From Tubulanus polymorphus (lineage: Eukaryota > Animalia > Nemertea), in NCBI RefSeq assembly GCF_964204645.1, contig NC_134031.1, forward strand, positions 8,618,001 through 8,682,000: 64,000 bases of DNA, given 5' to 3'. This document shows, piece after piece, positions 1,886 through 61,567 of the stretch; position 1 is the stretch's first letter, and each line of letters begins with the position of its first letter. The translations under genes and the position numbers were made by a program. The notes beneath the pieces are model-generated. The model did no database searches. It saw nothing but the letters and a program-made list of their open reading frames with translations, and was not told the DNA's origin.

Positions 1886-3378
1886 CTTTGGAAGAGAGTT
1901 CAAGTATCCGAATAACCATAGAAGCGATAACACTAAAAACCTCATTTTCTAATGAGTAAATACAGTTTATTAACACGAACGTTTTCGGGATCATATCCCC
2001 TTATCAGGTGAAATACAAGTGAATCAAATGGTTAAACTACAGGTTTATATACAACATAAGTTACAAAATTACAAGTGCTAAATTCTAAGCTAATTACAAA
2101 CCAAGTATTTAATTACAAGCTAATTATTTGAATACATTTAAGATAAAGGATGAGCCGTTTTGGAATAATTGTTGATTTAGAGAAGGTCGTTGCGCTTTAA
2201 TAAACTGGGCCTCCCTTATTTTACAGTCGAGATCAGATGAGCCTTTGTCTAGAATTTTGAATTTGTTATCACTGAATTCCTGATCACAAGTGTGACAAAT
2301 TGCGAGATGTTGTCCAATCGCAGAAGTCTTTGATCTGTATTCTTTAATCCTAATGGCTAAATGTCGTTTAGTTTTCTCAATATAGGAAGTGTTTATATCA
2401 CATAAACAGTTAAATTTATATATGACTTAAGCCTTCAGCGATTTAGGGGTAGCACATTTCAAAGAGAAAAAATTCTTAATTTTGGTCGTAGTGAATGCAC
2501 ATTTCAGGTTAATTTCAAAATTCCTTTTAAATAGATATTTTGATTTTCGGGCAAATAGGGTTGACGGGTTACCAATATACAGTAAGGAGATGAATAGATC
2601 AATTCTTCATCGACGGGTTTCGGTTTAGGTTCGGAGTTCTGTTTCGATTTCAAAAATCTATTGATACATTGATCGATGACATGAATAGGAAACGCATCGG
2701 ATTTAAACAGATTTTTCAAGTAATTGATTTCATCTGAAAAGATGGTCCAGTCACTGCAAATATTGTAAGCACGAAAAAGCATGGTGTTGATGAGTCCTAT
2801 TTTCCATTTGTACGGGCACATGGCGTTGAAATTCAAAAGCAGGCCAGTGTTGGAAGCTTTCCTGTACACTCGAGATATAAAATCATGACCGGTTTCTAAC
2901 GGAATTTGTATTTCGGTATCGAGAAAAGGTAATAGATTAGGAACCAGTTCGAAAGTGAATTTCAAGTTAGAATGGAGGCGATTCAATTCTTCAAAAAAAT
3001 AGTCTGTAAGTGGACTCATTAAGAAATATGCCGAAAATATCGTCAACGTATCTCAGGTATAATGTCGGTTTGTAATTAGTTTTGGAGAGGAGCAAGTTTT
3101 CAAAATGGGCAAGACAAGGGTTGGCTAAGGTTGGGCCTAAGGGGCTGCCCATGGTGACCCCATCAACTTGCTTGAAAATCCGATTATTGTACATGAACAA
3201 ACCTGAAGTTGCGATTTTCAGTAATTCTTTAAATGCAGCCTTATCATATGAAGGTTTAGAGTTGGAAGCATATACATAATCGGAGACTATCTTTCAATGG
3301 AACATTAGTGAATAGTGACTCTACATCAAAACTTATTAGGATATCAGAAGGTTTAAAAACGAATTGTTTCAGTTTGTA
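1886..3378 (-). mobile_element. 5'-truncated Penelope-like retroelement (RT plus GIY-YIG endonuclease remnants)
   Basis: ORF fragments ISFDVESLFTNVPL, KQVDGVTMGSPLGPTLAN and YLRYVDDIF, plus a C-terminal IYKFNCLC..SYIEKTKRHLAIRIKEY. Flanked by an 8-bp duplication TGGTAAAT (1878-1885 and 3379-3386) that is single-copy in other HINE A copies. Confidence 0.9.
1974..2010 (-). ncRNA. Degenerate minimal hammerhead ribozyme in the Penelope terminal repeat
   Basis: Minus strand CAC-CTGATAA-GGGGATATGATCCC-GAAA-ACGTTC-GTG. The core reads CTGATAA instead of CTGATGA, so it is probably inactive. Confidence 0.6.
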
Positions 3379-6472: not shown

Positions 6473-7407
6473 GCAGCAGAACTACATTTTACTCGGTCTA
6501 ATTCGACAGCTTCCATTTTGCTTTCTCCAGGGTTCACTATTATGAAGAAACAACAAATAATTCATTTAATAAAATATGTGGGTTATATACTAAAAACGTC
6601 TTGAGTATATACATATGGCTATATACAGATTTGATCCACCAGTCTTCAAGTATGTGATCAGTTTCCCTAGTGGGCAAGTGCCAACTATCACAGTTGAACT
6701 ATGCGGCACCTCGACAACCATTTGAGGGTACTCGAGAAGCCAGTTGAGCTACTTTCCGCATAGGGGAAATCCCAAACCCAAGCCAACATTACTAAACAAC
6801 TTAGGGTGAGCATTGTTTGCCTACTTGACTGGTGACTGATTCATTTTCAGAGCCAGAATGGCTTTTGTTTCCGGATCCGGTCCCAAGTTTCCATCCAGAC
6901 ATCTTGGTTACTGGGAGCCACTGAGCACACAAAGTCCCTCTGCCATGTAGAAGCCTTTATTGCAGCTCGCGGTCGGAGTCGTCCCCTGGCCGGTTGTCCC
7001 TCTGTAACGACAACCAACGACGAACGATTGAATATATTTGCCAAATCTTTAATGCGCCTTACTATCAACAATAACGACGATTAACTGCAATAAAAAATAC
7101 AAAAAAAGTTCTGAATACAATTATCCTTCGTATGCCATGAATTAAAGCACATTTACACTGCAGTTAAATCCAGTAGCAATCCATAATATACATAGAAAGG
7201 CAGAAAAATACAATGTATGATTAAATCAGCACAGCTTACCGAGTTTATGGCCCGAAATATTCATTGGTTAAATATACAAATACTGCAAGACACAGCTACC
7301 AAAAATGTCCAACTTGGAGGGCCAACTCCTAGACTACAACTGCCAGGATTGAAATACTAATACTCAGTAGTGTGAAATCAGGTGACAACTGACAGGTGAC
7401 AAGAGGA

Positions 7408-10400
7408 TTAGGATAAGCTGGCCATGGAAATAACCAAGCCACGCACAAAAGGAATTATATTTACAGTATACGACATTATCACACCAAATAAAAACGATTT
7501 GCGCGGAACACCCTCATCTACCGATTCTCCGTCGGATTCACCTTGTTCTGAGCCGGTGAGAACAGCGAGAGTCGGTGGCTCAGCTCGAGCAGGTGTTTCG
7601 GCTTTAATCCTTCCATTCCGAGGGTGCGGTTCCACCGGAATCAGCTGATCCTGTTCCTCCTCCTCCGAGCTTGAAGGACTATGTCCTTGTGCAACCGGGT
7701 CATGCTTCATGATGCCGTGCCTAGTGGAGGGAGGTTTGTTCTGGGGAACCTAGGGGTTTTCACCACCATCAAACCTAACTATCGCCGGTTTCATGTCGTT
7801 GAAGTGGACAACTTTGGTCTTGGTCTTTCCTGAGTCTCCACCCGATAATTTACCTCGGTCAGGCGCTGTGTGACCACAATCGGGCCATACCACTTCCTTC
7901 GGGGAATTTCGGGGCCTCCCCAGGCTTCACATAGTGACTGCATAGCCGGTCACCAACTTGATAGCCACCACGTGATGTGAATCTGTCATAATACTGTCGC
8001 TGGCGCCGTTGGGCAACAGTCAATCTCTCCCTGACTGCATTATATGCAGATTCAAGTCGGCCCGCGACACACCGAGCGTATTCTGTTGTGGACTGATCTG
8101 GCTCCGGGCTACCCACGATCAGATCAATCGGGAGACTCATTTCACGTCCAAATGTCAAAAAGGATAGAGTCTCCTGTGTTGATGACTGGACACTCGATCG
8201 GAATGCCATTAAGCATCCCGGAAGGTGGTCATCCCAGTCTTTCCCATTCTCGTCAACTGTCACCGTCAGCATCGCTTTGATCGATTTGTTGAAATTTTCA
8301 ACTTGTCCGTTCCCTTGAGAGTGGAAAGCAGTGGTTATAGTCCGATGGATGCCGAGTAGCTGATTAATCTCCTTGAACACCCTCGACGTGAAATTGGAGC
8401 CCTTATCTGAATGGAGGCTCTCCGGGCAACCATATCTGCAGATACACTCATTGATGAGTAACCGTGCCACTGTTTTCACTTTCTGGTTTCGCATCGGCCA
8501 GGCTTCCGGCCACTTAGTGAAAGCGTCCTGTACAACCAATATATACTGGTGCCTCTTCGTGTCGTAGGGTTTATCGGCTCTATCACGTCGATATGCAGAC
8601 GCTGGTTTGCACGCCCAACAGGTGTCGAGATGAGTGAGGCCCTGGTCTTTCTAGGTGGGTTTTTGCTGGTTTGGCAGTCCTTACCGCACTGGACATATCT
8701 CCGCACCATACCTTTCAGGCCGGGGCACCAAAAACTTTCTGACGTTTTTGACTTTCTGGTCAGTTTTCTTTTCACTTAGGTGTTTCGCTGCAAAACCATT
8801 GTGTAACTCCCTCAGGGCGATCTCTTTTAACTTACTCGGAAGTACAATCCGGTTCCTGGTGTACCGAGTCCCTGTTATGGTAGTTACACACAGCACATTG
8901 TCCACAACTAACAACCGCTCATAAATAGCTAACATACTCTTACTTATACGACCGAAATGTCGCATCTCATTTGGCTGATTACTCAGCACCATTGTACGGA
9001 CGAGGTCTATTTGTGGGTCTGCTGTCTGTGCACTCTCAATTTCTCGCATGTTCAAATCAGGCTTAACAGTTCCTGTCAGTTCCTGTATTCGTCGTATCGG
9101 TTTCGGTTCAGTCGGTCCACAACTGGGGCAATCGCCATGACGTCTGACCTTTTTTGGGAAACGAGACATGGCATCTGCATTCCCATGTTGCCTTCTGGGC
9201 CGATGCTAAATATCGAACTGGTACTCTTCAAGGCGCTCGTACCAGCGCGCAATCTGACCCTCCTGCTCCTTGAAATGTCTTAACCACTTGAGGGCCGCGT
9301 GGTCCGTCCTTACCAGGAATCTTTTGCCGAGCAGATGATGTCTGAAATGATGGATCATGTCTACTAAAGCAAGCATCTCTCGACGTGTCGTGCAGTAATT
9401 TTCTTCACCTCCTTTCAGTGTTCGTCCACTATAAGCAATAACTCTATCAACCCCCTGGCTATCGTCTTGTGAAAGGACACCGCCGATAGCCCAGTTGCTG
9501 GCATCAGTGTCGAGAATGAAGGTGTCTGCCGATGTACTGAAATCAGGGAATCCGAGAATTGGTGGTTTTGCAAGTGCCATTTTCAATCGCTGAAATGTAG
9601 CCTCCTGTGCCTCTCCCCAATGAAACGGTGTTCCTTTCTTGGTGAGAATGTAGAGCGGGTGAGCAATCGATGCATAATCTTCAATGAAGCGAGAGTAATA
9701 TGCGACGAGTCCAATGAAACTCCTTAGTTCAGTTAAGTTTGAGGGGGCCGGCCAATCAACCACTCGCTGTACTTTCTCCGGATCAGTCTGGATTCCAGCC
9801 CCGCTAACTATATGACTTAGGAATTTCAGCATCCTCCGAAACAAGTGGCACTTCTTGGGTTTCCGCTTCAAGTTAGCTGCTCGGAAACAGGCAAAAACTT
9901 CGAAAAGTCGATTAAGATGACTTCCCAAGTCAGAAAACAATAACATCGTCCAGATACACTAGATAACAAGTTTTCCATGCGACGGGGTCCAAAACCAGAG
10001 CCATCAGCCGTGAAAACGACGCAGGTGCATTGGTTAGCCCGAATGGCATGACGTTCCATTCGAATAAGCCACTTTCTGTAGCGAAGGCTGTTTTCGCTTT
10101 ATCTGCCTCACTGCCTCACTGACGGGCATCTGCCAGTATCCACTTGCGATCGAGTGACGAAAACCACGTTGATCCCGCAAGAGTCTCAAGTGTCGATTCA
10201 ACCCTCAGTAATGGATGGGCGTCTTCGACCGTGGCTTCATTAAGTTTACGGTAGTTCACACAGAATCTAAGTGAGCCATCTGCTTTCTTTGCGAGGACTA
10301 TCGGGCTTGACCAAGCTCCATGTGACTCACGTATCAAACCCTGTTCTAGAAGTTGATCAGTCGTGTCCGACACAAATTTTTGTCGATGAGGTGGTATTCG

Positions 10401-11802
10401 ACGAGGGTTTTGCTTAATCGGACGAGTATCCTGGGTGTCAATTTCGTGTTCTAATAGGCTGGTGCGCCCCAGATCGAAATCACCTGTCGAGAACACATCA
10501 ATGTTGCTCCCGATTACACTGGTCAATTCCTTTTTGGTCTCCTCAGGAATCCCCATGTCCGCATTCTGCAAGTCATCTAGCACGGTCTGGACCTTTTCTT
10601 CAGGGATCGGTCCCTGTGAGACTAAACGGTCTTGGTCACTCTTTTCGCCCTCATTTATCATGGACAAGGTCAGGGATTCAATTGGACTAAGCCAGGCGAT
10701 GGGTTGGCCCCAGTGGATAAAAGGGGCCAACCCATCGCCTGGCCCCTTTTTATCCACTGTGGTGAATCGGTAAAATTTGCTAGTCGCACCGGTGTGCGAC
10801 TCTTGGATAGGGTTGCTACTACTTTGGCAGCCTTCATACCCGATGACTTTAAGTTCTCAATGGTACCTGAAGTCGAGTTATTACCCACGAATTTATGTCT
10901 CATTATACCACTAGTGACTATCTATGTTCCCGCCGGGATACACAAGGTTTTTCTGGCGATAATTCTGCAGCATCTGGCCTTACTCTCTTGATTTCGAAGT
11001 GGAATGCTAGCCGTGCCAAAAGTAAGCTCATTTAATTCAAAATCAATCTTGCAGTTGAAGGACTCACTACCAGAAATCACTACCAAGTAGACCATCTTGA
11101 GTAACATCATCTACAATAACCATGGAGATATCAAAGTCACGACCCCCTAATGTAAGCCGTACTACATGTATCTCTATCCCTCTTAGGTGAAGATCCTGTC
11201 CATTAGCTGTACTTAGGCATCCCTCGGCTTTTTGCAGCTCGCTTACCGACTTTGTTGGGTTACGCTGCCCAGACTGAGGTCTTTAGGACAGTGACTGCAG
11301 CACCCGTATCGAGAAGGATACAGACCTCATCTTGGCTTTTTATTTGGCCCGTACAATAGAGTCCTGAGTCATGAACGATTACATCGCCCACGGTGTAAAC
11401 ACCTGAGCGCCCTCCGCTGGTTGTGGAGAGAGGTGAACCCTCCCTGGCCATTGTTGGTGGTGTGGCGTCCCTTGTCTCAGTTTCAATTTTCGATCCATAG
11501 GTATGGGGGAGTGGTTCCAGTTCAGGTGATACCATTACATCAGCCATCTGGGTTAGGTTTGAGTCACCTGCAGGCACATCACCCAAAATCTGTTGCCTCA
11601 TACGTCTTTGCGGTATTCGATATTTTCTTGTCGCATCAAAGTCATTAGGCTGCCCAGGGTAGGGAAGTCTTATTGGGTTGGGGTTCTCCTGCCCCTCTGA
11701 GAGCCCCTCCTGTCGTTTCCCGATGATGATGGTTTTGTGAATTGGCAATGACGGGAATAATATCCTCGTTGACCGCAGTTGCAACACTGGACCTGGGGGC
11801 AC
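7408..11802 (-). pseudogene. pol: Gypsy pol (protease, RT, RNase H, integrase), broken by stops and frameshifts
   Basis: LLDTGA protease; WSSPIVLAKKADGSLRFCVNYRKLN RT; LDTDASNWAIGGVLSQ and TDHAAL RNase H; LHNG..C..C zinc-binding region; DAFTKW, LHSDKGSNF and NGQVENFN integrase core. Confidence 0.92.
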
Positions 11803-12632
11803 TGACTTCCAGGATGATCAGGTTCGCGACAGCGCCAGCATATGTCGTCGCTCCGTTGTGACTGTTGGTTCATTCTCAGCTCCATCATATCCATATATGT
11901 GGCTAAGGACTCAACCATTTGAAGGAGTTTAGTCATATCATTTTGGGGGACACTGACTGCTGCAATCCGGCCCTCGGTAGCTCCTTGCTGTACCACCGAA
12001 ACTTTCTTTTTGCGGCTTTCTGCCGAACTGGAGAGGGTATCCGTCAGCTTTTTCGCAGTGAGCCTACTCCTGGCATGTCGTACAGCGTCCGAAATTGAGG
12101 GCGGGTCCTCTATCATCAGCGACTCCCTGGCGGTATGCGGTAGGTTAACCCCTGCCAGGAACTGGTCCATAGCCAGTTCATCCTGCACTTCCCTTGAAGT
12201 GATAGGATATGCGCCCCGGGCCAGTTCTTGTAATTCATCTGCGTAATGTTCAAGGGACTCCCCTCCACGCTGAACCGGTGCTTTCAACAAAATTCTCTCA
12301 CAGTACGAGACTGTTTTAAAACGGTCATGCAGCCGGTTGCAAAAATCCATATGTGACATATCAACTGGGAGCTGTAAATTCGACACTGCTTGATAAGACT
12401 CATGATCGAGCCGCATTTTAAGGTTTTTCTTCCGAGACGAACCCCCATCCCTCATGGCGCTTATCCCGACCTCATCTGCATAGTCATTAAACCGCTCCAA
12501 CCAAATTCTAGAATTTTGCCCAATATTATAGGGTTTTGGTGGTGGAATGCTTGACCGGCTATCACTCAATCGACGACTCTCCTGATCTTTTAACGACTTT
12601 TGGATCTGTTTATTTAGGTTGTCTAAAAACAA
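11670..12632 (-). pseudogene. gag: Gypsy gag with two zinc knuckles
   Basis: 320-aa ORF with Q.GGESLEHYADELQELARGAYP and DQFLAG. Knuckles CWRCREPDHPGSQC and CCNCGQRGYYSRHC (second lacks the His). The start region is frameshifted. Confidence 0.88.
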
Positions 12633-12991
12633 CCCCTCGCCCGATGTGCTTGGTTCATCGTCACTGTAAGTAAGCCTCAGCTCCTTAGTCTACGTTATGC
12701 GGTACAGACATTATTGGATACGAGAAGTGATAAATAAAAATGTACAATATCCAAATTTGGGCGTACACTGATAATTACTGGCTGTAAGGTGGGTTAGGGT
12801 CAGCAATCTGAGGTAAAAACACTGTAGGTTAACTCAACAGACGGTGGAAAACTAATAACCGACACCAGATTAATCTCAGTGGCCGTAAATAAACCGATAA
12901 CTTTCAGACTCTCTGTGAGAGAATTTACACAGACTATACTATACGTTCGCTTCGATTCAACTCAATATTTCCACAGTTTTAAGGTTCTAAA

Positions 12992-17078: not shown

Positions 17079-17826
17079 AAAACTAGGCGTCCAGGGACAC
17101 TATGCCCACTTGGGAAGTGGTTTCAAATGCTCAACAATCTAACAATTTCAATATTCAACGCCCCCTGGTGACCATATACAAAAACCAATGACCTTGAAAC
17201 TCACCACAATCATAAACATGTCAGCAGCTACGATTTTGCAATTGATTGTGATGAGAAAATATACCTCGTTACCTATTTAATATGGAAATATTAAGTTATT
17301 CTACTATTCAACGCCCCCTGGTGACCATATTTAAAACCCAATGACCTTGAAACTCACCACAATCATAGAGCATGTCTTGAACTTCAACTTTGCAATTGAC
17401 CATGGTAACAAAATATGCCTAGGTACCAATGTAATAAGGAAATACTAGGTTATTCTACTTTTCAACGCCCCCTGGTGAGCATATAGAATAACTAATTTCC
17501 TTAAAAATCATCACAGTCATAGAACACGTTATAAGTTACAACTTTCTAATTCATTGTCGAAACAAAATATGCTTAGGTATCAAAATAATGTCGAATGTAT
17601 TCGAAAGATCAAGGTAATTGATCAAGGCGTCTTCAAAATTTAAAAAACGTATTAGAGCGCTGATTTTGGCGAACAACAATGGCTGCCAGTCGGCCATCTT
17701 GATTCTGAAAGGACCAGATTTTGGGCTGAAGGTGTGTCTAGGGTAGATACATGTACAAACCAAATATCAAGACATTACAAGTGAACGCAATAGCCCGCTG
17801 GAACTAAAGTCTCAAGTGGGCTAAAA
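17079..17826 (-). mobile_element. HINE family B with internal ~153-bp tandem repeats
   Basis: SubTIRs GCCCACTTGGGA / TCTCAAGTGGGC. Minus-strand 3' stem-loop GTGTCCCTGGACGC then CTAGTTT. Unit TTCAACGCCCCCTGGTGA at about 17154, 17307 and 17461. Confidence 0.75.
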
Positions 17827-20800
17827 TCACGATCAGGCTTACAACAACTGATCCGGCAGTCATAGAAATGAATGGATTACAAATTTTATAGCAGTTTACA
17901 AAAATGAACGAGCCAATTATCAGAAAAAACAATGTACAGTAAGTAGTATGTATCATTTTTTAGCCTTATTCATTATTATGTTAACTCCGACAACAATCAG
18001 AATGTGACAGCATAGGACATGCGATGAGCCCATCACCAGCCATCCAACCACACAAACCATCTGGTGATTTTCGCCATTTTTCAGAAATCTTTTCAAAAGA
18101 TTAGAATTGAAGTCGTCTTGTATGCGTACGTGGGTTGTAACAATGTATGATGACTAGTGCTATACAACACTTCATGACAGATTACGCACATCATAACTTC
18201 ATCATGCGCAGTGAAAAGGTTCAAACTGAACCAGAAAATTATCTGTGCTGGCTGGTTTTATAACCAATTTTACCTGGAATTTAGTTCACATCATGTGATA
18301 ATTTGATTACTGCCTTCAAATGCTAAAATTTGAATTATATATGTACTTGTATCGACCTGCCGCTGTAAAATAACTGGAAGAAGAGATTCATATCACTTAT
18401 ATCAGCAGATTTCAATAAAATACATAACTTTTTTTTCCAAAATATCCTGTTGAAGCTGTTAGGTTTAACGTGTAGGTAGCATATTTTTCACTTCTATTCC
18501 TTGTTTCTGGTTTCCTTTATTTACTTCATTTATATTTTTTTACTACATTCGTAATTTTGTCACAAATGTTGCCTCTACTTGAAAATATATTGATCGACTT
18601 CAGATGCAATTTATGTACATGTACTCATGGGGCCAATTTGTTTGCTATAAACTGGTAGGTGGTTAATAAATGAAATTGAATTGAATTGGTAGAAAAGACT
18701 CATTGCTCAGTCCACAGATACCTTCTGTTTTTATATTGAATAAGTCAAACAAAAATTTGGTATTCTGGTTTCTTGGCTGAATCAGTGGGTCCCAAATGAA
18801 CTGAGAATAGTCGCGTCAGGACTGGATCCAGCATTAGTACTACTCAGTACATAACTGTAAATACTACTCAGTACCCCTGAAAATAGTGAAATTTTGTCAC
18901 CTCCAGAAATCGATGTAAGCATTTGTTGGGATTTCAAATTAATGATACACACATAAGGGGATCCACTTTTATCATCGTGGTCCATCCACGAGTACTGCTC
19001 AAGCAATAATAAATGGCTCACAGCTCATCATCCTAAGGGCTGAAGGGCTTTCCCATTGATTCAAACGAGCCAATGGGCGAAACTTTCCATGTTAATTCCA
19101 ACCCCTATTTCTCTCCTAATGACACAATATCAGCTGTGTGGTTACGATTTGTGCCACCCAGAACTAACAGAACGTTACTCCCAGAACCATTCTCTGAGGA
19201 TCAACATGGTTGATCCTTAAAGTCAAGATTATAAATCTGATACACAAAATAACTCAGGAAATTCTAGTACGATTACAATATGATGAATAAATAAATTGTC
19301 CATGGGCAAAGTGTGGTTTACCTTGAAAGCTAGAGGTTGTTTGAAGTAAGGGGTATTGCTTGAAAAATCTGTTCAGATGATATTTCATGATATAGACGAT
19401 GAAAATAAAAACCCCTCTCAGGGCCAAGTACTGGCCCCGCCTCTGATGAATCTGACAAAAACTGGTATCATATAAAAGGCCATAATATTGTTTGCGAACT
19501 TTTATTATACTGTTAAGTTATAGGACTGATAGTTTTTGAACTATGTGGCTTAAAATATGTGTTGTCCAAAAGCACAAAAATGGCTGAAATTATTGAATTT
19601 CTAGGGTCGTCGCGGTGTAGAAAACCTAAAAGGATTAATACCCTGGTGTATTAATATAGAAATCGATGAGCTTGAAACACATCACAATCATAGAACTTGT
19701 AATGAGCTACAATTCTGCAATTGATTGTGGTTACTAAAAATATTCACTGCTACCAATGAATATGGAAATACCATGTAATTCTGCTATTGAACGCCCCCTG
19801 ATGAACATATACAGAAATCAATTACCTCAACAAAACCACCCCATATAAGGAGATGTGACCTATGACAATACCGACTGATCAAATACCTAGTCTAAACTAT
19901 TTCCTGACCAAAATAACCGTCTGATGAGTTTTATATTTCTTTGCTAAGTATACCATCATGAATTTCAACAGAAAATAGCAAAGCATTGGTAAGCTACAGT
20001 TCTAAATATGGGACAGCCATCTTGTGTCCGATCGACCTAATTTTTCTTATGATGATGGGCTTTTGGCCACATGTTCAATGTGTACCTCGGATCTGCAAAG
20101 CTCGGAAGTTTATAATCACTTGAAAACTTCAAATTTGTAATAAGTGCTGATTTTGGTGGAACAACAATGGCTGCCAGTCCACCATCTAGATTCTGACTGG
20201 GCCAGTTTTTCAGCGGCGGATGTGTCTGGGTAGATATACATAGATACCTGCACTAACCAAATATCAAGACAATCCATTGAAAACGTCCCGAGATGACTGG
20301 ACTCTAATTAGGGATTGATGAAAAGTGAACATAATAGCCCTCTGGGACTTGAGTCCCAAGTGGGCTAAAATGAATAACAAAGAATTGAAATAACAAAAGT
20401 TAAAATTATATAAATACATAAACATAATATAAATACATAAACATGACGTTTTTAAACATTAATTTGATGTAACCTGTAAAATTTATGGTATCCACGAAAA
20501 TGAACACCGAAACCAACATGAAAAATATGGGGTAGTCAACTACCTTTATGATATTAAAGCACATACGTGAGCCTTGTCTACACAAAGATATTTCAACCCC
20601 TAATGATCAACTTTTATGCAGTAACTTTGAGTTGGTCACCAATCAAACACTTTAACTTGGATTCGTAAACCCTGCACTCTGAATTAGTCCTTGCTTTTAG
20701 TCGGAGAATAATATGACTGTCCTTCCTCTGCTTTATCATAACAATTCAGAACTCAATCAGCTTGAAATCTTACCTGGGGGGACGAGGAGACCCGCTTATC

Positions 20801-23290: not shown

Positions 23291-23482
23291 TCATTTTCGG
23301 GGAAGGAAGTGTTGAAGGAAGTCAATAGGCAATGGGAAGATAATCGTTGAGTTCTTCTCTCCGGATATTGTGTTGAGAGTTTGTAGATATCGAAGTTGTA
23401 AAGCAGCTGGTGACTCATTCATTACATCTGCTGCTGCTTTCAGTGCTCGAGACGAATTCTGTTCACCCTCTGCAGCTATCAC
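23291..23482 (-). CDS. Stomatin/band-7 family protein, last coding exon
   Basis: AG acceptor at 23483-23484, then VIAAEGEQNSSRALKAAADVMNESPAALQLRYLQTLNTISGEKNSTIIFPLPIDFLQHFLPRK*, the classic stomatin C-terminus. Confidence 0.97.
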   Translation of the reverse strand: MIAAEGEQNSSRALKAAADVMNESPAALQLRYLQTLNTISGEKNSTIIFPLPIDFLQHFLPRK

Positions 23483-25507: not shown

Positions 25508-25586
25508 CTTTGCTCTTGCCTCTCTTGTGGCTTCAGCCTCTGCAGCCATAGCCCGTTGTAACTGGACAGGCAATCTTACGTCTTTA
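25508..25586 (-). CDS. Stomatin exon (KDVRLPVQLQRAMAAEAEATREARAK)
   Basis: 79 nt, phase 2 to 0, TTTTTTTTTCCAG acceptor and GTAATT donor. Confidence 0.97.
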
Positions 25587-25886: not shown

Positions 25887-25942
25887 ATCTCAACACGTTC
25901 AACCTTTATGCCCCACTCATCAGTTGCACTATCCAAACATTC
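25887..25942 (-). CDS. Stomatin alternative exon B (ECLDSATDEWGIKVERVEI)
   Basis: 56 nt, phase 0 to 2, TTTTCTTCATAG acceptor and GTAAGT donor, canonical WGIKVERVEI motif. Confidence 0.93.
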
Positions 25943-26747
25943 CTATGAAGAAAATGTGATAAAGGCCTAGCCTATGTAGCTAAGAAGAGTGGATATGACA
26001 ATTCTCTCATGCACAGATACTGTTTCACTTGACATAACAACAAAAAAGAGGAAGTAGCATAAATGTCTATACACACAATCTTAAATGGCAAATGGCACAG
26101 GGGATCAGTAACCAGGTGCTCAAATCAAAATTCCTACATAACTGCCTCTTAACAAGCACTAGCAGACAAAAATTATTAATTCTTAAGAAATTTTATTTTT
26201 TGCATTCGTGTACACTGTAATAGGTGTAAAGTCGATAAAGATTAATGGATATTTAGTTTAATTGCCAAGAGGATTTCCAATGATGCTCGTGAAATGAATA
26301 AAAAGTTAATACAATAGGAATAACCTATTCAGAGAAAATTTTTTAAAGATAAGATCAAACATTAGAACTTATTCATTTTCTGCTATCCCATTCACCAAAA
26401 ATACATCCATGTTTGCCCATATGACTCTGAAGTGAATGTTTGAAGAAACATATGAATACTTGAAGTCATTTACAATTTTCTAATCAATTATCCCAAGGAA
26501 CCTAATTTTGTGCTGGCATGAACAGCACATCGTCTGCAGGCTGAAAATGTGCTACAGGGCCAATGTCACAATTCTGTGACTATGGCGGTTGGTAGGCGTC
26601 ACACTACAATATTGGGACTATGGCAGTTGAAGGGTTAATTAAACTGGTCAGAAATAAGGGTGAATAAGTGTGAGATTTAACTTACCCTGTAACTAAATAA
26701 AGCAAACTAGCCCAAAAGATCTATGGTTTTCATAAAGTCTGGGTCTA

Positions 26748-27101
26748 GGGACCATTCATTTATCAAACAGACATGGGGGGGAAGGGCTATATCTGACGTG
26801 TACAATGGTGATATCTTTATTGTACAAGGAATTTCTGATACCACATGCTACCCATAGACCTATATACAGCGATGTGTAGAGAGGCTCAAGCCAATACGCC
26901 AAAAACTAGTGATTTCATTATGGTACTGAATGCTACCGACCTTATATCAATATAAAATCAACGATCATAAGTATTTCCTCGTTTTGTGAAAACCCAATGC
27001 TTCCAGCCATTGCCTATGAATACACCTATATGCATGCATACAGGGGGAGGGGGGCTTAAAAAATCAGAATTTTATGTGTATGTAATAAATGAATGGTCCC
27101 C
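26748..27101. mobile_element. Harbinger-like MITE between the two alternative exons
   Basis: GGGACCATTCATTTA ... TAAATGAATGGTCCC. Confidence 0.6.
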
Positions 27102-27417
27102 TATGAAGATATTAAACTCAAATCTTTTATTTAGTTTCTACTCATCAATATTGGTGCACATTTGTTTCCATTGAGAGCTTACACAATAAACCCGAACAAC
27201 TTTTTGCACAAAGGCCTTTGTTTAATAAGGTTTATGTTAAAAAAGTTTAGTTTTTTTTTTCTTAAAGTGATAATCACCTGATTGTGCAATTTTTCACATG
27301 TCTTTGACCAAAAAATCAATTTTACAATACAATTAGTATTGTTTTTTGAGTGCTTGTTTAAAGACAACCTAGTAGGTGCACGACGAGACATGGTAATTTT
27401 CAACCGTGTTTACTTAC

Positions 27418-27473
27418 ATTTCAACGCGTTGTACGATAATACCCCAGTCGTACGTCGCATCATAAAGTGTTGT
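27418..27473 (-). CDS. Stomatin alternative exon A (TTLYDATYDWGIIVQRVEI)
   Basis: 56 nt, phase 0 to 2, TTTAACGTAG acceptor and GTAAGT donor, open frame, homologous to exon B. Confidence 0.85.
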
Positions 27474-28645
27474 CTACGTTAAACATTTACCATGTAATCA
27501 GTGACACAAAAGTGATGAATCAGGAATAAACAATTTTGACCACTCGAACAAATCAGTCAACAAATAATTTTCCAGCTAGATGCAATAAGATCAATAAGAT
27601 CTCCAAATTGAAAATTAAAGGAAGTTTTTATTAGCCACAGCATTTTGATAGCAGGTTGGAGCTATTTTTTCAATTATCAGTTCAAGGGGAACTGCAGTGA
27701 ATTTTCTAGTAACCACATGCGTTTAAAATACTTATATTAACTCATCTTTTGGAAGGTCGAAAAACATTTCATCCATATTTCAAACTAGGGGTCCAGGGAC
27801 ACCATGCCCACCTGGAAAGTGGTTTGAAATTTTCAACAATCTGACAATTTCAATATTCAATGGCCGATGGTAAACATATACAGAAACGAATGACCTTGAA
27901 AGTTACCATAATCATAGAACATGTCTTAAATTTAAATTTTAAATTTTGCAATGGAGTACCCGCACCGTTTTTGTGACAATCGAGGATTCCACCAGGTTCA
28001 CTAGTAGCTAATCTACTTAAAAATTAATTTATTGTAAATTTGCTAGGCCTAATGTAAGGAGTCTAGAAATTCAGTTATATGAAAATAAACTAATTTTTTA
28101 CAACTGTCTTATACAACCGAGTGTTTGCTACGCCATCTGGTGGGAGAGCTGGTGTTGCGGGTTCCCCATTGATTTTATTAACAGGATATGCCTAGGTATC
28201 AATATACAATATGGAAATACTAGGTTATTCTGCTATTTAATGCCCCCCTGGTCACCATACACAATAACCAATTACTTTGAAACTCGCCACAATCATAGTA
28301 CATGTCATGAGGTAATATTTTGCAATTAATTGCTGTTACAAAATATGCATAGGTACCAATATAAATAGACAAATTTCATATGATTCAATATTCAACTCCT
28401 CTGGTGGCGAAAACAAAAAAATGGATAATCCCAATTTCATGTGAGATGTATCCTATGACAAAGCTAACAACTATAAAAAAATCAAGATAAGTTAAAACCT
28501 GTTGATGTTTTTCCTCAAAAACCTATTTTCCATCTACGAATGATGACAAAAGGTGGGCCAACGATTGCATGACAATCAACTGATGGAAAAACCCATCTAG
28601 TATGTTAAAGAATGAAAGTTTCCAAAGTAAACCCATCAAAAATTA

Positions 28646-31520: not shown

Positions 31521-32549
31521 TTGCAATGAGAAATGGCAAACTAGTAGGAAGCTACAGGACTCGGAATTCGGGCCAAAATTGACATTTTTGTCCACTTAAA
31601 AGGTCATAGGACGGCCATCTTGAGTCCGATCGACCCAATTTTTATGGGCCCAGGGGGTTTTCGAATATAATTGAAAAAGATCAAGGTAATTGATCAAAGC
31701 GTCTTCAAAAAGTTCAAAAACATGTAAAAAGTGCTGATTTTGGTGAACAACAATGGCTGCCAGTCGGCCATCTTGATTTTGACAGGGCCAATTTTTTGGC
31801 CGAAGATGTGTCTAGGGTAGATACATGTGTAACCCGAATATCGAGACATTACATTGAAGCGTCTACAAACCTTCCCAAAATAACTGGATTCCGTCTATGG
31901 ACGGACGGACGGACGACGGATAAAAAGTGAACGCAATAGCCCGCTGGGACTAAAGTCCCAAGTAGGCTAAAAAGGAGAGGTTAAGCAGAGTCCTAGGGCC
32001 GCCGCCATGACACGAGAAATGGGGAGAGTGTAACTTAGTACAATGCTGTGTATTCCTTTGTTTATTCTTTGTGTATTCATTACATGAAGCCTGACAACAT
32101 TTTGAAAATGCAGCATTTGAATGTATATTGAATATTGTCTAGTGAATATAGTCATATAATGATTACGAGATAGATGGAGATGACACTGGCAGCTAAGCAG
32201 GAAAATTGTTGACAGCCAGATTTTTAATGAGTGTGTATGACACTCAATTATGTGAGTGGCTGGACTACATCATCAATGTTTAAATGCCTCACTTTGTGGA
32301 GTTTCTAATATGACAGCTCCCAACCACATTACATGCTACCGATAGCCATATAAGTTTCCTTGTCAGAGTTAATTTGAGATAGAAGTTCAGGAGTTTGGAG
32401 TAAGAAACTGGACGCTTAGATATGCGTTATGTTTCAAATAAAGAGAGATAACGGAAACATGATAACACAAACAAGAATCAGAATTTTGGACTCTTGAACT
32501 GAGTCATGGGCAATTAAGACTTTGACCAAACTGTCAAACTAAATGTTAC

Positions 32550-32753
32550 CTGCATTGCAGCGCTGATGCTTTCTCTTTCCGATAATATCTCTGAGAGATT
32601 CCTCGTTCCAAGTACATTTCTCAATGTCGTCTGCGCTAACAATCGAGTTGAATGATGCGCATCTTCAACATTAGCAACGGATATTGTAGCATTTGACACA
32701 CGGTAATATACAACTGCATCAACCGATACTGTGACACTATCACGAGTTAGTAC
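32550..32753 (-). CDS. Stomatin exon (VLTRDSVTVSVDAVVYYRVSNATISVANVEDAHHSTRLLAQTTLRNVLGTRNLSEILSERESISAAMQ)
   Basis: 204 nt, phase 0 to 0, AG/GT flanks, SPFH core motifs. Confidence 0.97.
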
Positions 32754-39664: not shown

Positions 39665-40800
39665 CTAGGCCGTAAGTAGGTAGCCAACAATGATCATAAT
39701 AGAACATGTCAGCAGCTATGATTTTTTAATCAATTGTGATAACAAAGTACACCTCGTTACCAATTTAATATGGAAATACTTAGTTATTCTACTATTCAAT
39801 GCCCCCTGGTGACCATATGCAAAACCCAATGACCTTGAACCTCATCACAATCATAGAACGTGTCTTGAACTACAACTTTGCAATTGATCATGGTAACAAA
39901 ATATGCCCAGGTACCAATCTTATAAGGAAATACTAAGTTATTCTACTATTCAACGCCCCCCTGGTGACCATACAGCATAACTAATGTTCTTGAAACTCAC
40001 CACACTCATAGATGATGTCATGAGCTACAACATTGCAATTGATTGTGGTAACAAAATATGCATTGATAGAATTATAATATAGAAATACTAAGATATTGTA
40101 TAATTCAACGCGCCCTGGTGGAAATATACAAAAACCAATGACCTTGAAAATCACCACAATCGTAGAACATGTTATAAGCTATAACTGTCTAATATATGCT
40201 TAGGTATCAATATAATGTCGAAAAACTTACTGAGTCCTGATGACACCAAGATGGCCACCAATTGCGTCATAATTGGCTGATCAAAAATACCGGTCTCAGG
40301 TATAAAACATCCCTTTCCAAAGAATACCCATCAGCAATTGCAATGAGAAATGGCAAACCAGTAGGAAGCTACAGGACTCAGAATTCTGTCCAAAATTGAC
40401 ATTTTTGATCACTAAAAAGGTCATAGGACAGCGATCTTGAATCCGATCGACCCAATTTTTCTTATGCTGATGGGCCCTTTGGGGATTCATATATACACGA
40501 AAGATCAAGGTAATTGTTCAAAGCGTCTTCAAAATTTCCCTCAAAAAGTTCAAAAACGTGTAAAAAGCGCTGATTTTGGCGAACAACAATGGCTGCCAGT
40601 CCGCCATCTTGATTCTGACAGGGCCAGTTTTTGGGCTGAAGATGTGTCTAGGGTAGATACATGTGTAACCCAAATATCAAGACATTAACTTGAAGCGTCC
40701 TCAAAACTTCCCAAAATAACTTGATTCCGTCTACGGACAGACGACGGACGAAAAGTGAACGCAATAGCCCGCTGGGACTAAAGTCCCAAGTGGGCTAAAA
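39665..40800 (-). mobile_element. HINE family B copy with ~3.5 tandem ~153-bp units
   Basis: Repeat unit at about 39795, 39948 and 40104. GGAC microsatellite, and hairpin CTGGGACTAAAGTCCCAAG before GTGGGCTAAAA. Confidence 0.75.
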
Positions 40801-44497: not shown

Positions 44498-44580
44498 CTC
44501 TTGTGGGGGTACGTCAAATGATACAGTTCTCAAATCAACCTTTCTATAACTTTCAATGCACGGTAATACAAAGAATATAC
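44498..44580 (-). CDS. Stomatin exon (GIFFVLPCIESYRKVDLRTVSFDVPPQE)
   Basis: 83 nt, phase 1 to 0, TTTGTAG acceptor and GTATGT donor. Confidence 0.97.
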
Positions 44581-45371
44581 CTACAAATAGTCAAGTAAAA
44601 TGAAAATGAAATTATATTTGAAGAATTAATAAAAAGCACATTACATTCAAGTGTAACCTCAAATTCTATTCATTGATAAGACACTGTAGATTATCAAATA
44701 GAGTTGATAAAGCAAGGGGGTTAACATATTTCCAAGCATGTGTGTCAACCTATGATAGTATATAATTTTGGCTGAACTTTTAGTAGAAAATTTTGAGTTC
44801 ATTCATATAAGTTATCATATGAAGGTCTACTAGTAGTAAAGATCAAGATGTAAACATCAAAGTAGTATGTTAACTATCATCATAAAGACATAAATGTCAC
44901 CCGATCAAAATCGTACAAATCCTGAATACTACGATAAAAGAAGCATTTTATGATAAAGTCTGAATGACTCAATTATTCCAATGATGATGGACCCTTAGAG
45001 GATCCATATACATGTACATATGACGGGTATTGATCAAAGCATCTTCCAAGATATTTCAGATATTTCCAATGTATCTAATGGAAATTTTGAAATAAGGGAC
45101 ACTTCAAAAATTAGGGCAATTCTAAGGGAATTGGAAGGGGACTTTCCGAAAAAGGGGATCCTCGAACCCCCATTGGCACATGCATGGACTATAAGTTAAG
45201 AACTGCTGATATTTTCATAAAAAACGTTTTTCCATCAATGAATGAGGACTGATGACATTTAAGATGGCTGCCGATTGCATCACGCTTGACTGATCAAAGA
45301 ATTGACAATAGACTGACAAAAAAACTCGAGAATTTCAACGAAAAACTAGATGAGTTGGTACACCTTTTACG

Positions 45372-52250: not shown

Positions 52251-53185
52251 CTTTAGAACACTATTGTCCATAAAATAATTTTCTAGAAATCCGAAAAGTT
52301 CATCGGCCCATCCATAATTCAGCTTGTAAAAAAATCAGCCTTAAGAGTAGACAAGAAACGAAATTCTTAATATGGACTTTCCTCAATTTAAATGAGTGGA
52401 GTTTATGTAACCGGCTGGTTGTTGTATCGGCAGGCTGGCTGGGTGACTAGCATTTACACCAGCGGTACAGGATTCCATCCATCAGGAACAACAAGGCAGT
52501 TAAACCTTATATGTACAATCTTTATTGCATCCCGGAATGAAAATGATTATCATAGCTTTACATAGTCTTTATATACCAGGGATGATAACAGACCATTATT
52601 GAAAAGGCGGAAACGAGCGCCGTAGGCGCGAAGTAATTACGGGGGGTCTGGGGGCCCTCCCCCCAGAAAATTTTTGATTTTCACATCATCTCAGATCGTT
52701 TTTCAGCAGTTTTCCGATTGAAATTTCACTCAGCAAAGCCAAAAAATCAAACAACATCGTCCATGTTTTACACAACACACTGCTAGTTCCAAGACGGCAG
52801 GGACATAATTGATGCAGAGACAACTATAATGTAACTAGTAGGTTCGAATCCCACATTGATCAATCTTCTTGAAAGCGACGATCACTTGCCCACGCAATAG
52901 ATAATTGAATTAGACTTTATTTTCCAGCATGCATCATTAAAGCACTAATTTTTAATAAACTGATATCACAACAAGCTAGATTTCCATAAAAAAAACTTAA
53001 ATAGAACAGTGGGTTATCTTATGAATTTTCTAACGAAGTAAGGTTTGGAAAAATATTCTATAAAACACATGTACACATCATTACCAATCTAAACATACTA
53101 CATGTACATAGTCAGTACAGTCAGTCGGCATCATTTTATTTAACAAAACACATAAATGTTTTTCCAATAGTGGACAAGCCAGAGA

Positions 53186-55374
53186 TTACTTCTTTTTTAA
53201 TAGTCTTACAAGTTCCATCTGCTTATGTCTTTTAGCTTGTCGTTGTTTTGCACGCATAGCAGATACATGTGCCTCTCGGGCTTTCTTTGCAGCTGAGATG
53301 CACTGTTCGCGGGCTTTGCGTTTTGAAACTTTCTTAACCTCTTTAGCCTGAAGTTCCTCCATACGAGCCGCTTTCTTATCTTTTTCACCCTGCAATTCAT
53401 CCTTGTATCGTTTAGCTGCAGTGTTCATATTTTTAACGAGATTTGGACACACAGGGTCATGAAGAATATCTTCTCTTTTGAAAAAGTCTACAGCTGACGT
53501 TTTGCCTAATCCGTATTTCACACTCTGGATTGCGCTGAAAGATTTGACATGAAGTCTATTGGTTGTGCTGTTCAGAATTTCGCCCATAATGCTAAACGAG
53601 CTCTCGACAACTGGGCAACTGAAACAGCTAAGTAAAGCAAATACCATGCGACAGAGGTATGGATATTTGCCCAAATCATGTACAGCAGCCCACCAGGAAT
53701 CGATTCTAACTTGCTTTCCATCTTTATCAACTGCTGCTGGCAGACTGGAATCCGAGTGGAATTTATGCACTTCTAATTTATAACAGTTGATCTCCGTTTC
53801 ATTAGCCAGAACATTGACGACTAATTGTGGGAGTTTTTTCATATATTTCAGTGCCGTTTCATGTCGCTGGCATTTTGGGTCTATTGCCGAGATATACCGG
53901 AGAAGTTTATTGTCGATAGGCATTTTTTTAGCGAGGTACTGGGCGGTATTGAGATAGGCCCTCTCGACACGATCATGAAAGTCTTTGACAAACTGGGATG
54001 ATTTATTTTCCCCCGCAATTATTTGGGATGCAGATTCGCCTATGAACATCTCAGTGGTTGGCAGGAGGTTTTCTGAGATTATCAGAGAAGACAACTTTCG
54101 ATCCGATTCAGGAATTGCAGATGGTTTAACACAAAGGGAAATGAAATCCCTGAATAATTGACATTGCTCATCATTGAGCTTGTGGACACATGGCTCTTCA
54201 ACAGTTTGGAATAAGAGTACATATCTTTTTAGAACTGGCAATACCGCCGTGTAAAAATGCACATAAAGCTTAAGCTTTTTACGCTGAATGATGAGTTTAT
54301 CGATAATTCGTAGCTTTCTTTCTTTTCCTTCCGCTGTCAGATTTTTCCATTTGGCGGCAGCAGCAACATAGATTTTTTTGATCTCATCTTTCGTGGGTTC
54401 AGACAAGTTAAATTTGCGATATATGTCAACACATAGAGCCAAATACACGATTTTGTCTTTCTGTATAAATCCATAGTACAGCAGAGTATATCCATCGATT
54501 TTGCGAATAAGGTCTGACGCCGCATCATGGACCGATAGCCATCGGGTTCCGACGTACCGCTCGGGCATCGAAAACCCAATGCCTAAGAGATCAAGGATAA
54601 TTTGGAGCCAGTTTTCTACGTCCTTAGAAAAATGCAAATCACTTGCAATATCGGTTATCAATTTCTCTATGAATCCATCAAATTCTTTTGTGAAATGTTT
54701 CGCGGCGTTGTGAGTGTGATGTATCGAATCACCGTCGATGTCAAGCAAATGCTGGGCCAAATTATCCTTTATTAACTTCTCCAAGCCAGTTTTACTACCT
54801 CTCATGACGTTACAGCTGTCGAGGAGGACAGACATTAATCGGTTATAATCTAAATCACGCTGCTGGAAAACCTCAACCAAAGCACTATAAACAGATGCGC
54901 TAGTGGTAGAAATAAGATTACATGAGGCCAAATGTCTGACAACAACTTGTCTCTCCTTCTCACTAAAGTAACTGACAAGGATCGACAGAACTTTTTTTGT
55001 GGATTGGCTTGTAGCCTCATCGATGTTTAGTGAATAGAACGTATTTCTGAGTTCATCCGCTAACTGTTCTTCGGTGGTTTGCGCCAGACCCAGTCGCATC
55101 TTATATGAAGCCGCTAAACGACCCATAGACAATTTGCTTAATGCTGCCCGATCCATGGCAAGTGCTTTTGCCAACTCAATCAATTTTGGAGACTGAGAAA
55201 ACGGCAATGAGTTTTCAGCAATATATGAAAGAACTAAAGCCTCCTGGCTTACGACCCGGTCCGATATTGGGACTTTAGGTTTAGCGGTCGTCGTAACGGC
55301 CTGTTGTTCATTATTTGGATTTTGGAATATTGGGCAGATCCCGTAAGATCGACCAACATCGGCTCCCGAACTAC
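53186..55374 (-). CDS. hAT-like transposase, exon 2 (DDE core and dimerisation region)
   Basis: FYSLNIDEAT, VLLDSCNVM, TRWLS, SWWAAV..KYPYL and VESSFS. Acceptor TTCACTTTCAG at 55375, no internal stops. Confidence 0.9.
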
Positions 55375-55500
55375 CTGAAAGTGAATGCAAATTCTAGTTC
55401 TTTATTCGGTTTGATTTTACAATTTAAGAAAAACTTGAAAATCGTCTAATTTTATTTACAAATATTAACCTGTGTGGCATGTGAACGTAGGCCTACTTAC

Positions 55501-55786
55501 CTGGAAGTACGTAATTAGATCTCCGTTCTTTGACGATGTCAACGTGTTTCTGAGTTTTAGCGTGGTTTTCAAGCGCAATTCGACCCTTACTTCCGTATTT
55601 TATTTCTGTTTGGCACCAGAGACAATAAGCTTTCCCCGGTATGTCTATCTTCCTCACGAAGTCAGCGAGAGGAATCCCATCAACCATTTTCTCCAGCCAA
55701 TCCCACTTCCATAGGTTTTTTTTAAATTCTTTTTGGTCGATTGTCCTGGGGTCAATCGTCCCAACTCTCTCAACAATTTTCCACAT
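55501..55786 (-). CDS. hAT-like transposase, exon 1 (BED-like zinc finger)
   Basis: MWKIVERV..WKWDWL..AYCLWCQTEIKYGSKGRIALENHAKTQKH. Phase-1 GTAAGT donor at 55500 joins exon 2 in frame, giving ~824 aa. Confidence 0.85.
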
Positions 55787-60400: not shown

Positions 60401-60811
60401 CCAGTATAAGTGACACACACTTGTGTGAAGCCATGAACAGGGCATGTGATCTTCCGAAATGAAATGTAGTTCCAACAACAAAAAATAAATTAATAAATAA
60501 GATTCCGAGGATTCCGATGAAATTCAATAGGGTTAGAGATTTTTTTACTGTATTGAATGTTTTGAAAGTTCCGAAGAGAAACAAAGCCTCGTTTGGAAGT
60601 TATTTTGTATCAAAGGAAGAAAGTTTTATATGCAATAGCAAAAATTAGAAAAGACACTTGCCTATGAAGTGAGAACAAATTTTGGTGAAAAAGGTTACTC
60701 TGAAACTTCGGAATTTATACAGGTTTAACATGAGTTTTTGTATGAAATGTTGATAGAATATTAGCTTTTCATATAATGGATACTGGGATTGATATACACT
60801 GTATCACCAAC

Positions 60812-60921
60812 CTTTAAGCAAATACAGAGGGAAAATGGAAAGGTACATGCCACCATTAACCATGATATAATAGTCAAGACCCAGCCACAGCAACCAAGAC
60901 CTTCAATGGCATTTTCATCAG
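60812..60921 (-). CDS. Stomatin exon encoding the membrane hairpin (DENAIEGLGCCGWVLTIISWLMVACTFPFSLCICLK)
   Basis: 110 nt, phase 1 to 0, TTTATTTATAG acceptor and GTTGGT donor. Contains the CGW palmitoylation motif and the conserved hairpin proline. Confidence 0.95.
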
Positions 60922-61567
60922 CTATAAATAAACAAAACATATGAACATCATACAAGACAATTAGGTTAATGGTGGAATTTAGATGATGTAATGGAATCAT
61001 ATCAAGTGGCTTAACTAAAGTGATATAACCATACTACAGAGAAAAGGTCTGCCCTATATCAACCTTAAAGTAATGTCACATTAAATCCATACAGAAATCC
61101 AAGATTCTGTCGAATCAAGATCATCTATTTGATGTTTTCATTATGTAACATCTGTTACCAGCAAAAAACCAATCTTTCATCAGAACTAATGCAAATATTT
61201 GCTGAGAAGGGTTCTAACTTATCCAAGATCCTGGGATTTATCAAACCCTCAAGAAATTTTTAAGAAGATGTAATTTCAAAATAAATCACATACTTCATGT
61301 AATCATGTTGACTCATATCATATATCAATATCATTGGCAAGATCATTTTTTTCTAATTAAAACTTAATCAATTAACTAATTTCTGCCAATTAAGTGGCCA
61401 ATGGTGAAGTGATTGACTGTCAGATACACGGTTATTGTACAGACATGTACACTCAGAATTCCCTGATCACTATCCCCAAATTCTCTGATCCATGCGAGAT
61501 ATAGTCTGAACATGATGGTAGAAGTCCCCAATTCGAATTTTATATGAAATAATCTATTAAAACGAAA

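What the first reader, a model, noticed from the sequence alone, without database searches (positions are those of the whole stretch)
25887..27473. Tandem duplicated, mutually exclusive exon in a stomatin/MEC-2-like gene that would swap part of the SPFH pocket
Seen: two 56-nt exons with identical phases (0 to 2) and GTAAGT donors lie between the same flanking exons. B encodes ECLDSATDEWGIKVERVEI and A encodes TTLYDATYDWGIIVQRVEI. Including both or neither shifts the frame, so only one can be used. Known: this segment matches mammalian stomatin residues ~176-194, containing T182 (hydrophobic pocket implicated in ASIC modulation) and W185, just before the V197 dimer strand. Inference: A keeps L, AT, WG, V and RVEI but changes D to Y twice, K to I and E to Q. 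Length, frame and splice sites are preserved despite heavy nucleotide divergence, which suggests a selected isoform switch altering channel or partner specificity.
Basis: partly seen in the sequence, partly recalled or inferred. Interest (0 to 1): 0.85.

Follow-up and report, generated by a model that had tools for sequence, protein, structure and literature searches.

The report
Either/or exon pair in ribbon-worm stomatin
A ribbon-worm stomatin gene (a membrane-scaffold and ion-channel regulator) carries two old, intact, either/or copies of one small exon, a design also found in this gene family in other animals, but no RNA data could be obtained to show that the unusual copy is used.

Summary
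On the minus strand lies the Tubulanus polymorphus gene for XP_074655776.1 ("band 7 protein AGAP004871-like"), a close stomatin homologue. Between exons ending at 32550 and starting at 25586 are two homologous 56-nt exons, A (27473-27418) and B (25942-25887). Both have an AG acceptor, a GTAAGT donor and the same phase. Using both or neither creates an early stop.

A and B share 33/56 nt and 11/19 aa. Differences pile up at third codon positions, so both copies evolved as coding sequence after an old duplication. A is single-copy in the genome.

The same exon is tandemly duplicated in relatives. RefSeq isoforms of Lineus longissimus and of the hemichordate Glandiceps talaboti swap it. A copepod-like contig, three unnamed contigs and a scallop also carry two or three intact copies.

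Against current use of A: RefSeq lists only the B form. A has the weakest acceptor in the gene. A replaces two almost invariant acidic residues (human D179 and E190).

Verdict: a real tandem-duplicated, frame-enforced mutually exclusive exon pair. It is a new member of a known kind. Use of A and any effect on channel partners are untested. Other follow-ups in this scan reported similar exon pairs elsewhere in this genome.

The parts
60809..60922 (-). upstream coding exon (about residues 41-78 of XP_074655776.1, membrane hairpin); boundaries approximate
   Evidence: local tblastn of P0380 on the window, 100% identity
47769..47846 (-). coding exon (about residues 78-102, VVQEYERAVIFRLGR...); 5' boundary approximate
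44498..44584 (-). coding exon ending ...DVPPQE (residues about 102-129); single copy here, although Lineus has three variants of it
   Evidence: Lineus isoforms
32550..32753 (-). coding exon, 68 aa, ends ...ISAAMQ in phase 0; splice donor feeding A or B
27418..27473 (-). exon A, 56 nt, divergent alternative copy (TTLYDATYDWGIIVQRVEI); AG acceptor with weak pyrimidine tract (11/25), GTAAGT donor; not in RefSeq
   Evidence: (single copy in genome)
25887..25942 (-). exon B, 56 nt, canonical copy (ECLDSATDEWGIKVERVEI); strong acceptor (17/25 pyrimidines), GTAAGT donor; the copy used in XP_074655776.1
25508..25586 (-). downstream coding exon, 79 nt (KDVRLPVQLQRAMAAEAEATREARAK); acceptor shared by A and B
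23291..23482 (-). last coding exon (VIAAEGEQNSS...FLPRK) plus stop codon

Best explanation
Exons A and B are products of an old tandem duplication of the 56-nt exon that encodes the end of a helix and the following strand of the stomatin SPFH2 domain (human residues 176-194). Because 56 is not a multiple of three, an mRNA must carry exactly one of them. Both or neither gives an early stop well before the last junction, so such mRNAs should be removed by nonsense-mediated decay. B has the strong acceptor and the family-typical sequence, and is the default form (the RefSeq protein). A has a weak acceptor and is most likely a regulated, low-abundance or cell-type-restricted alternative. It keeps the pocket residues Leu and Thr and the W-G...R-V-E-I core. 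It replaces two acidic residues on one helix face with Tyr (human 179 and 183). It also neutralises a Lys/Glu pair on one strand face (188 and 190). Shown here: the anatomy, the frame logic, coding-type divergence, and recurrence of the design in relatives. Inferred: current use of A, decay of the wrong forms, and any effect on how the N-terminal loop or a partner docks beside the pocket.
For: Anatomy and frame. Selection: 12 of 18 third positions differ against 11 of 38 first and second positions (Fisher p=0.0085), with pS 0.86 against pN 0.31. Random-substitution control: P=2e-4 for the aa identity and 3e-5 for the silent codons. Flanking introns show no similarity, so the duplication is old. 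A is single-copy, not a repeat or an insert from a paralogue. Same exon swapped in RefSeq isoforms: Lineus longissimus X1-X10 and Glandiceps talaboti X1/X2. Intact tandem copies with mostly third-position differences occur in L010, L013, L015, L016 and L017. A scallop has an upstream copy that also carries Tyr at the 179 position, and its RefSeq model XP_021351346.1 joins that copy to the next exon. The model of the B form puts residues 198-207 in a helix and 209-216 in a strand at pLDDT about 87-94, so 179/183 share a helix face and 188/190 share a strand face. D183 contacts R14 of the N-terminal loop in a human stomatin assembly (PMC13724742).
Against: RefSeq gives a single protein for this gene, with B, and its 90% cluster has one member. 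A has the poorest pyrimidine tract of the five acceptors examined. Among 100 distinct versions of this segment in relatives, position 179 is Asp in 99 and position 190 is Glu in 99, and A breaks both; this could also reflect relaxed constraint. Helobdella, a related contig and the Tubulanus paralogue each have a single copy. A hairpin that could loop out exon A is no more stable than shuffled sequence (z=-1.3).
Confidence: 0.55

Rival explanations
1. Retired exon: A was a working alternative exon for most of its history but is no longer spliced in. It is only beginning to decay, and the gene now makes only the B form.
For: RefSeq has only the B form. A has a weak acceptor. A breaks two nearly invariant acidic positions. 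Single-copy genes in leeches and in the paralogue show that the duplicate is dispensable.
Against: No stop, no indel, and both splice sites are intact. Nonsynonymous divergence is far below the saturated synonymous divergence. The changes come in structurally paired positions rather than scattered. A weak acceptor is also typical of regulated exons (general knowledge).
Confidence: 0.3
2. Dosage valve: A acts mainly as a regulatory exon. Including it together with B makes a frame-shifted mRNA that is degraded, which lowers stomatin output rather than making a second protein.
For: A+B gives an early stop about 98 nt before the last junction (corrected for the 25508 exon end). This fits the usual rule for nonsense-mediated decay (general knowledge).
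Against: A poison exon needs no protein-level conservation, yet A keeps 11/19 residues with 8 silently changed codons. Related species' records splice the copies one at a time.
Confidence: 0.08
3. Chance look-alike or fragment of another stomatin gene that landed in the intron.
For: A is short (19 codons), and an open frame of that length is common by chance (46%).
Against: A has exactly the same length, phase and splice signals as B. It is no closer to the paralogue (37/56 nt) than B is. It is single-copy with non-repetitive flanks. The aa identity is far above the random expectation.
Confidence: 0.03

Closest known systems
Lineus longissimus 'band 7 protein AGAP004871-like' isoforms X1-X10 (XP_064650278 to XP_064650288, RefSeq)
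   Same: It appears to be the same stomatin subfamily (no tree was built), in another ribbon worm. The same 56-nt exon exists in two versions used one at a time, and all isoforms are 325 aa.
   Different: The two Lineus versions differ at only 4 of 19 residues, and both keep Asp179 and Glu190. Lineus also swaps two other exons (three versions of the ...PPQE exon and two of the KDVRLP exon), which are single in Tubulanus. The Lineus locus itself could not be fetched.
Glandiceps talaboti (hemichordate) isoforms X1/X2, and tandem copies in a copepod-like contig (L010)
   Same: Two intact copies of this exon with most differences at third codon positions. The Glandiceps isoforms differ only in this exon.
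   Different: The copies lie 124 nt (Glandiceps) or 48 nt (L010) apart, so steric exclusion is possible in L010. In Tubulanus they are 1475 nt apart, and only the frame enforces exclusivity.
Mizuhopecten yessoensis XP_021351346.1 locus (L018)
   Same: A divergent upstream copy with Tyr at the 179 position and a non-Glu at 190 lies 2.6 kb before a canonical copy. The gene model joins the divergent copy to the next exon.
   Different: The scallop copy also changes Thr182 to Ala and Ala181 to Cys. Common origin with exon A cannot be decided from 19 residues. The scaffold starts inside the gene.
Classic tandem-duplicated mutually exclusive exons (e.g. sodium-channel exon 5a/5b; reviews PMC9013439, PMC9741552)
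   Same: Homologous neighbouring exons of equal length and phase, of old origin, that substitute a structural segment. This comparison rests on the abstracts listed and on general knowledge.
   Different: No competing RNA structure or other dedicated selector was found here.
C. elegans mec-2 alternative splicing (PMC8934639)
   Same: A stomatin-family gene whose isoforms are neuron-type specific (abstract).
   Different: As far as I know those isoforms differ in 3' exons, not by an exon swap inside the SPFH domain. The paper mentions mutually exclusive exons only as a category in its methods.

Membership tests
Stomatin subfamily of SPFH/Band 7 proteins | Band_7 (PF01145) domain | tested here: met
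   The precomputed Pfam hit PF01145 is listed for P0380, the RefSeq protein of this gene. I did not run a separate Pfam scan.
Stomatin subfamily of SPFH/Band 7 proteins | Full-length similarity to solved stomatin, including hairpin, SPFH, coiled-coil and C-terminal parts | tested here: met
   phmmer against PDB: human stomatin chains 9oh9_A, 9wkz_A and others at E about 1e-124 over residues 39-302.
Stomatin subfamily of SPFH/Band 7 proteins | Pocket-lining residues Leu178 and Thr182 (Brand et al. 2012) | tested here: met
   Both are present in exon A and exon B.
Tandem-duplicated mutually exclusive exons | Neighbouring homologous exons of the same length, phase and splice signals between the same flanking exons | tested here: met
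Tandem-duplicated mutually exclusive exons | A mechanism that forbids joint inclusion or joint skipping | tested here: met
   Frame shift with early stops in both cases. Decay of those mRNAs is inferred, not shown.
Tandem-duplicated mutually exclusive exons | Both copies kept under protein-level selection | tested here: met
   Codon-position test, pN/pS and random-substitution control.
Tandem-duplicated mutually exclusive exons | Transcripts that carry A alone and transcripts that carry B alone | not testable with these tools
RefSeq shows the B form only.
Tandem-duplicated mutually exclusive exons | Duplicated arrangement conserved in related species | tested here: inconclusive
   Duplicates of the same exon occur in Lineus, Glandiceps, a scallop and several contigs. 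One-to-one descent with A is not shown, and leeches have a single copy.

The most novel reading that the evidence does not exclude
Exon A and the scallop's Tyr179-type exon descend from one ancient alternative exon of lophotrochozoan stomatins. It gives a second protein form in which the acidic rim beside the hydrophobic pocket (179/183) and a charged strand face (188/190) are replaced. This would change how the N-terminal loop or a channel tail docks, so that particular cells (for example mechanosensory neurons) tune DEG/ENaC/ASIC-type channels differently from one gene.
Probability: 0.15. Interest if true: 0.65.

Novelty: new member of a known kind. Interest (0 to 1): 0.4.

Why it matters
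Stomatin-family proteins (stomatin, STOML3, MEC-2, podocin) tune mechanosensitive and acid-sensing channels and build membrane microdomains. How they gain partner specificity is unclear. My four full-text searches found no paper describing an exon swap inside the SPFH domain of a stomatin. Yet gene records of several phyla show exactly that at this one exon, which carries two pocket residues and, in human stomatin, a residue that holds the N-terminal loop. The ribbon-worm pair is the most divergent example seen here. It would be a natural experiment on what the surface beside the pocket does. On its own it is one more tandem-duplicated either/or exon, with use of the odd copy unproven.

Tried and rejected
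sent 9.6 kb. One search was one retry at 4.9 kb, within the operators' stated size limit for the reads tool. I did not try again, and read laying was not used.

2. Lineus locus: look-ups of isoforms X1 and X8 found no record. The genomic order and any unannotated Tyr-type copy in Lineus remain unknown.

3. Competing RNA structure: inverted-repeat search gave 24 short pairs. One pair (27388-27407 with 27476-27495) brackets exon A. However, the fold of that 124-nt stretch is not better than shuffles (z=-1.31, 17/200). The matching stretch around B folds worse than shuffles. I rejected this as evidence.

4. Flanking-intron similarity between A and B: none above shuffles.

5. Paralogue origin of A: only three stomatin-type loci exist in the genome. 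The paralogue at C7:3.89 Mb has one copy, and it is no closer to A than B is.

6. Literature: searches for stomatin or Mec2 with mutually exclusive exons found nothing on this.

Exons were joined only inside a local script to read the frame. The structure model is of the stored RefSeq B form.

Full report
**What is there.** The window is G000:C7:8618001-8682000 of a 268-Mb animal genome. Earlier notes of this scan named the animal as the ribbon worm Tubulanus polymorphus. I checked this. XP_074655776.1 ("band 7 protein AGAP004871-like [Tubulanus polymorphus]", P0380, 305 aa) sits on a contig of 21,623,276 bp, the length of C7. It also matches the window's exons at 100% within the exon boundaries.

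The gene runs on the minus strand from beyond 60922 down to 23291. It has coding exons at about 60922-60809, 47846-47769, 44584-44498, 32753-32550, 25942-25887, 25586-25508 and 23482-23291. It is a close stomatin homologue: phmmer to human stomatin chains gives E about 1e-124.

**The observation.** Exon B (25942-25887) is the one in the RefSeq protein. Exon A (27473-27418) lies 1475 nt upstream of B in the same intron.
- Both are 56 nt, start in phase 0, follow an AG and are followed by GTAAGT.
- They share 33/56 nt and 11/19 residues.
- A local frame check shows that A+B gives a stop 31 codons after the upstream exon. Skipping both gives a stop at the junction. Both stops lie roughly 75-100 nt before the last exon junction (the downstream exon ends at 25508).

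So one and only one copy can give a full protein. By the usual rule, the wrong forms should be degraded; this step is inferred.

**Is A real coding sequence?**
- Of the 23 nt differences, 12 are at third codon positions (of 18) and 11 at first or second positions (of 38). Fisher p is 0.0085.
- Synonymous sites are saturated (pS 0.86), while pN is 0.31.
- If 23 random substitutions are put on B, 11/19 identity is reached in 0.02% of trials and eight silently changed codons in 0.003%.
- If A had drifted freely for as long as it took to saturate silent sites, its replacement sites would be saturated too. They are not.
- The introns flanking A and B show no similarity, so the duplication is old.
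- A is single-copy in the genome.
- The genome has only two other stomatin-type loci. The nearer paralogue (C7:3.89 Mb) has one copy of this exon, and it is no closer to A than B is.

**The same exon is duplicated elsewhere.** This was the most informative result.
- In the distant ribbon worm Lineus longissimus, RefSeq isoforms X1-X10 are all 325 aa. They combine three versions of the ...PPQE exon, two versions of this 56-nt exon and two of the next exon.
- In the hemichordate Glandiceps talaboti, isoforms X1 and X2 differ only in this exon. Its two copies lie 124 nt apart.
- A copepod-like Logan contig (L010) has two copies 48 nt apart.
- ENA contigs L013, L015 and L016 (species unknown) have three, two and three intact copies.
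- In all of these, splice sites are intact and differences sit mainly at third positions, for example 16 of 22 in L010.
- By sequence signature, L015 and L016 look like the other stomatin type, the one resembling the Tubulanus paralogue (no tree was built). That would mean this exon has been duplicated in more than one gene lineage.
- Leeches (Helobdella and contig L012) have a single copy.
- Tigriopus isoforms swap a different exon of the same gene family.

I found no paper describing any of this. The design is present in gene records but apparently not in the literature I could search.

**What is unusual about A.** I collected 100 distinct versions of this 19-residue segment from relatives.
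- Leu178, Thr182, Trp185, Gly186 and Glu193 (human numbering) are essentially fixed, and A keeps them.
- A has Tyr at 179 (Asp in 99/100) and Tyr at 183 (Asp or Glu in 78; Tyr or Phe occurs in a few nematode proteins).
- A has Ile at 188 (Lys or Arg in 89; Met or Leu in leeches and Lineus) and Gln at 190 (Glu in 99).
- The single other Tyr179 case is a scallop exon. In Mizuhopecten yessoensis this divergent copy lies 2.6 kb upstream of a canonical copy, the same order as in Tubulanus. RefSeq model XP_021351346.1 joins it to the next exon.

Whether the scallop copy and A share an origin cannot be settled from 19 residues.

**Structural reading.**
- The AlphaFold model of the stored B form puts residues 198-207 at the end of a helix and 209-216 in a strand, with pLDDT about 87-94 there.
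- Hence 178/182 share one helix face. This is the pocket lining named by Brand et al. 2012, where T182W abolishes ASIC modulation (PMC3433786).
- Positions 179/183 share the neighbouring helix face, and 188/190 share one strand face.
- In a human stomatin assembly, D183 contacts R14 of the N-terminal loop while F19 enters a pocket between the two SPFH subdomains (PMC13724742).
- A therefore leaves the pocket lining unchanged but swaps an acidic rim for two tyrosines and removes a Lys/Glu pair.
- That these changes come as two spatial pairs fits a selected surface change, but this is inference. The R14 equivalent is not evident in the worm's N-terminus.

**Evidence against current use of A.**
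- RefSeq gives one product, with B, and its 90% cluster has one member.
- A's acceptor has 11/25 pyrimidines, against 14-17 for the other four acceptors.
- A hairpin bracketing exon A is not better than shuffles.

Exons were joined only in a local script to read the frame.

**Verdict.** This is a real, old, selectively maintained either/or exon pair and a new member of a known kind. B is the default form. A is most likely a rare or cell-specific alternative (about 0.55). Otherwise it is a recently retired exon (about 0.3).

Noticed in passing
L018:11471-12680 (Mizuhopecten yessoensis scaffold NEDP02002241.1): The intron after the canonical exon holds a tandem array (spacing a multiple of about 59 nt) of fragments. 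Each is made of the 3' half of this stomatin exon plus its GTAAGT donor, with stops in the upstream part. It looks like a minisatellite born from an exon-intron junction.
   Followed up: partly
L011:19266-24945 (Helobdella robusta) and L012:10776-15295: Two actin genes lie on the opposite strand inside the intron between the 56-nt exon and the next stomatin exon. The arrangement is shared by both leech-like loci.
   Followed up: no
L015:6646-6861 and 10034-10246; L016:8979-9170 and 10121-10318: These stomatin genes also carry two copies of the last coding exon (75-83% identical to the Tubulanus one). This suggests alternative 3' terminal exons in addition to the exon cluster.
   Followed up: no
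proteins P0484, P0477, P0485 and the other Lineus isoforms; P0063 and P0236 (Tigriopus): Lineus RefSeq isoforms combine three separate swap sites (3 x 2 x 2 versions). Tigriopus isoforms X1 and X2 swap the ...PPQE exon. The stomatin family seems prone to exon-swap diversification.
   Followed up: partly
protein P0097 (Macrostomum lignano, UniProt A0A1I8IC02) and P0022 (Helobdella): These gene models skip or misread the 56-nt exon, joining ...SMQ directly to DVRLPVQ or running into intron. These are probably annotation errors at this exon.
   Followed up: no
window 52571-56159: The hAT-like transposon noted by another first-stage finding lies inside an intron of this stomatin gene, between the exons at 60809 and 47846.
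   Followed up: no
window 7400-12700 (minus strand) and 2100-3300 (minus strand): Long open frames that look retroelement-like (a 339-aa and a 246-aa frame, among others) lie downstream of the stomatin gene. No family search was run on them.
   Followed up: no
window about 17640-17770, 20040-20310, 31600-31810, 40465-40680 (minus strand): An interspersed repeat recurs in several introns and flanks. Its translation repeats a motif of the type ...QPKNWPCQNQDG.LAAIVV... The element is unidentified.
   Followed up: no
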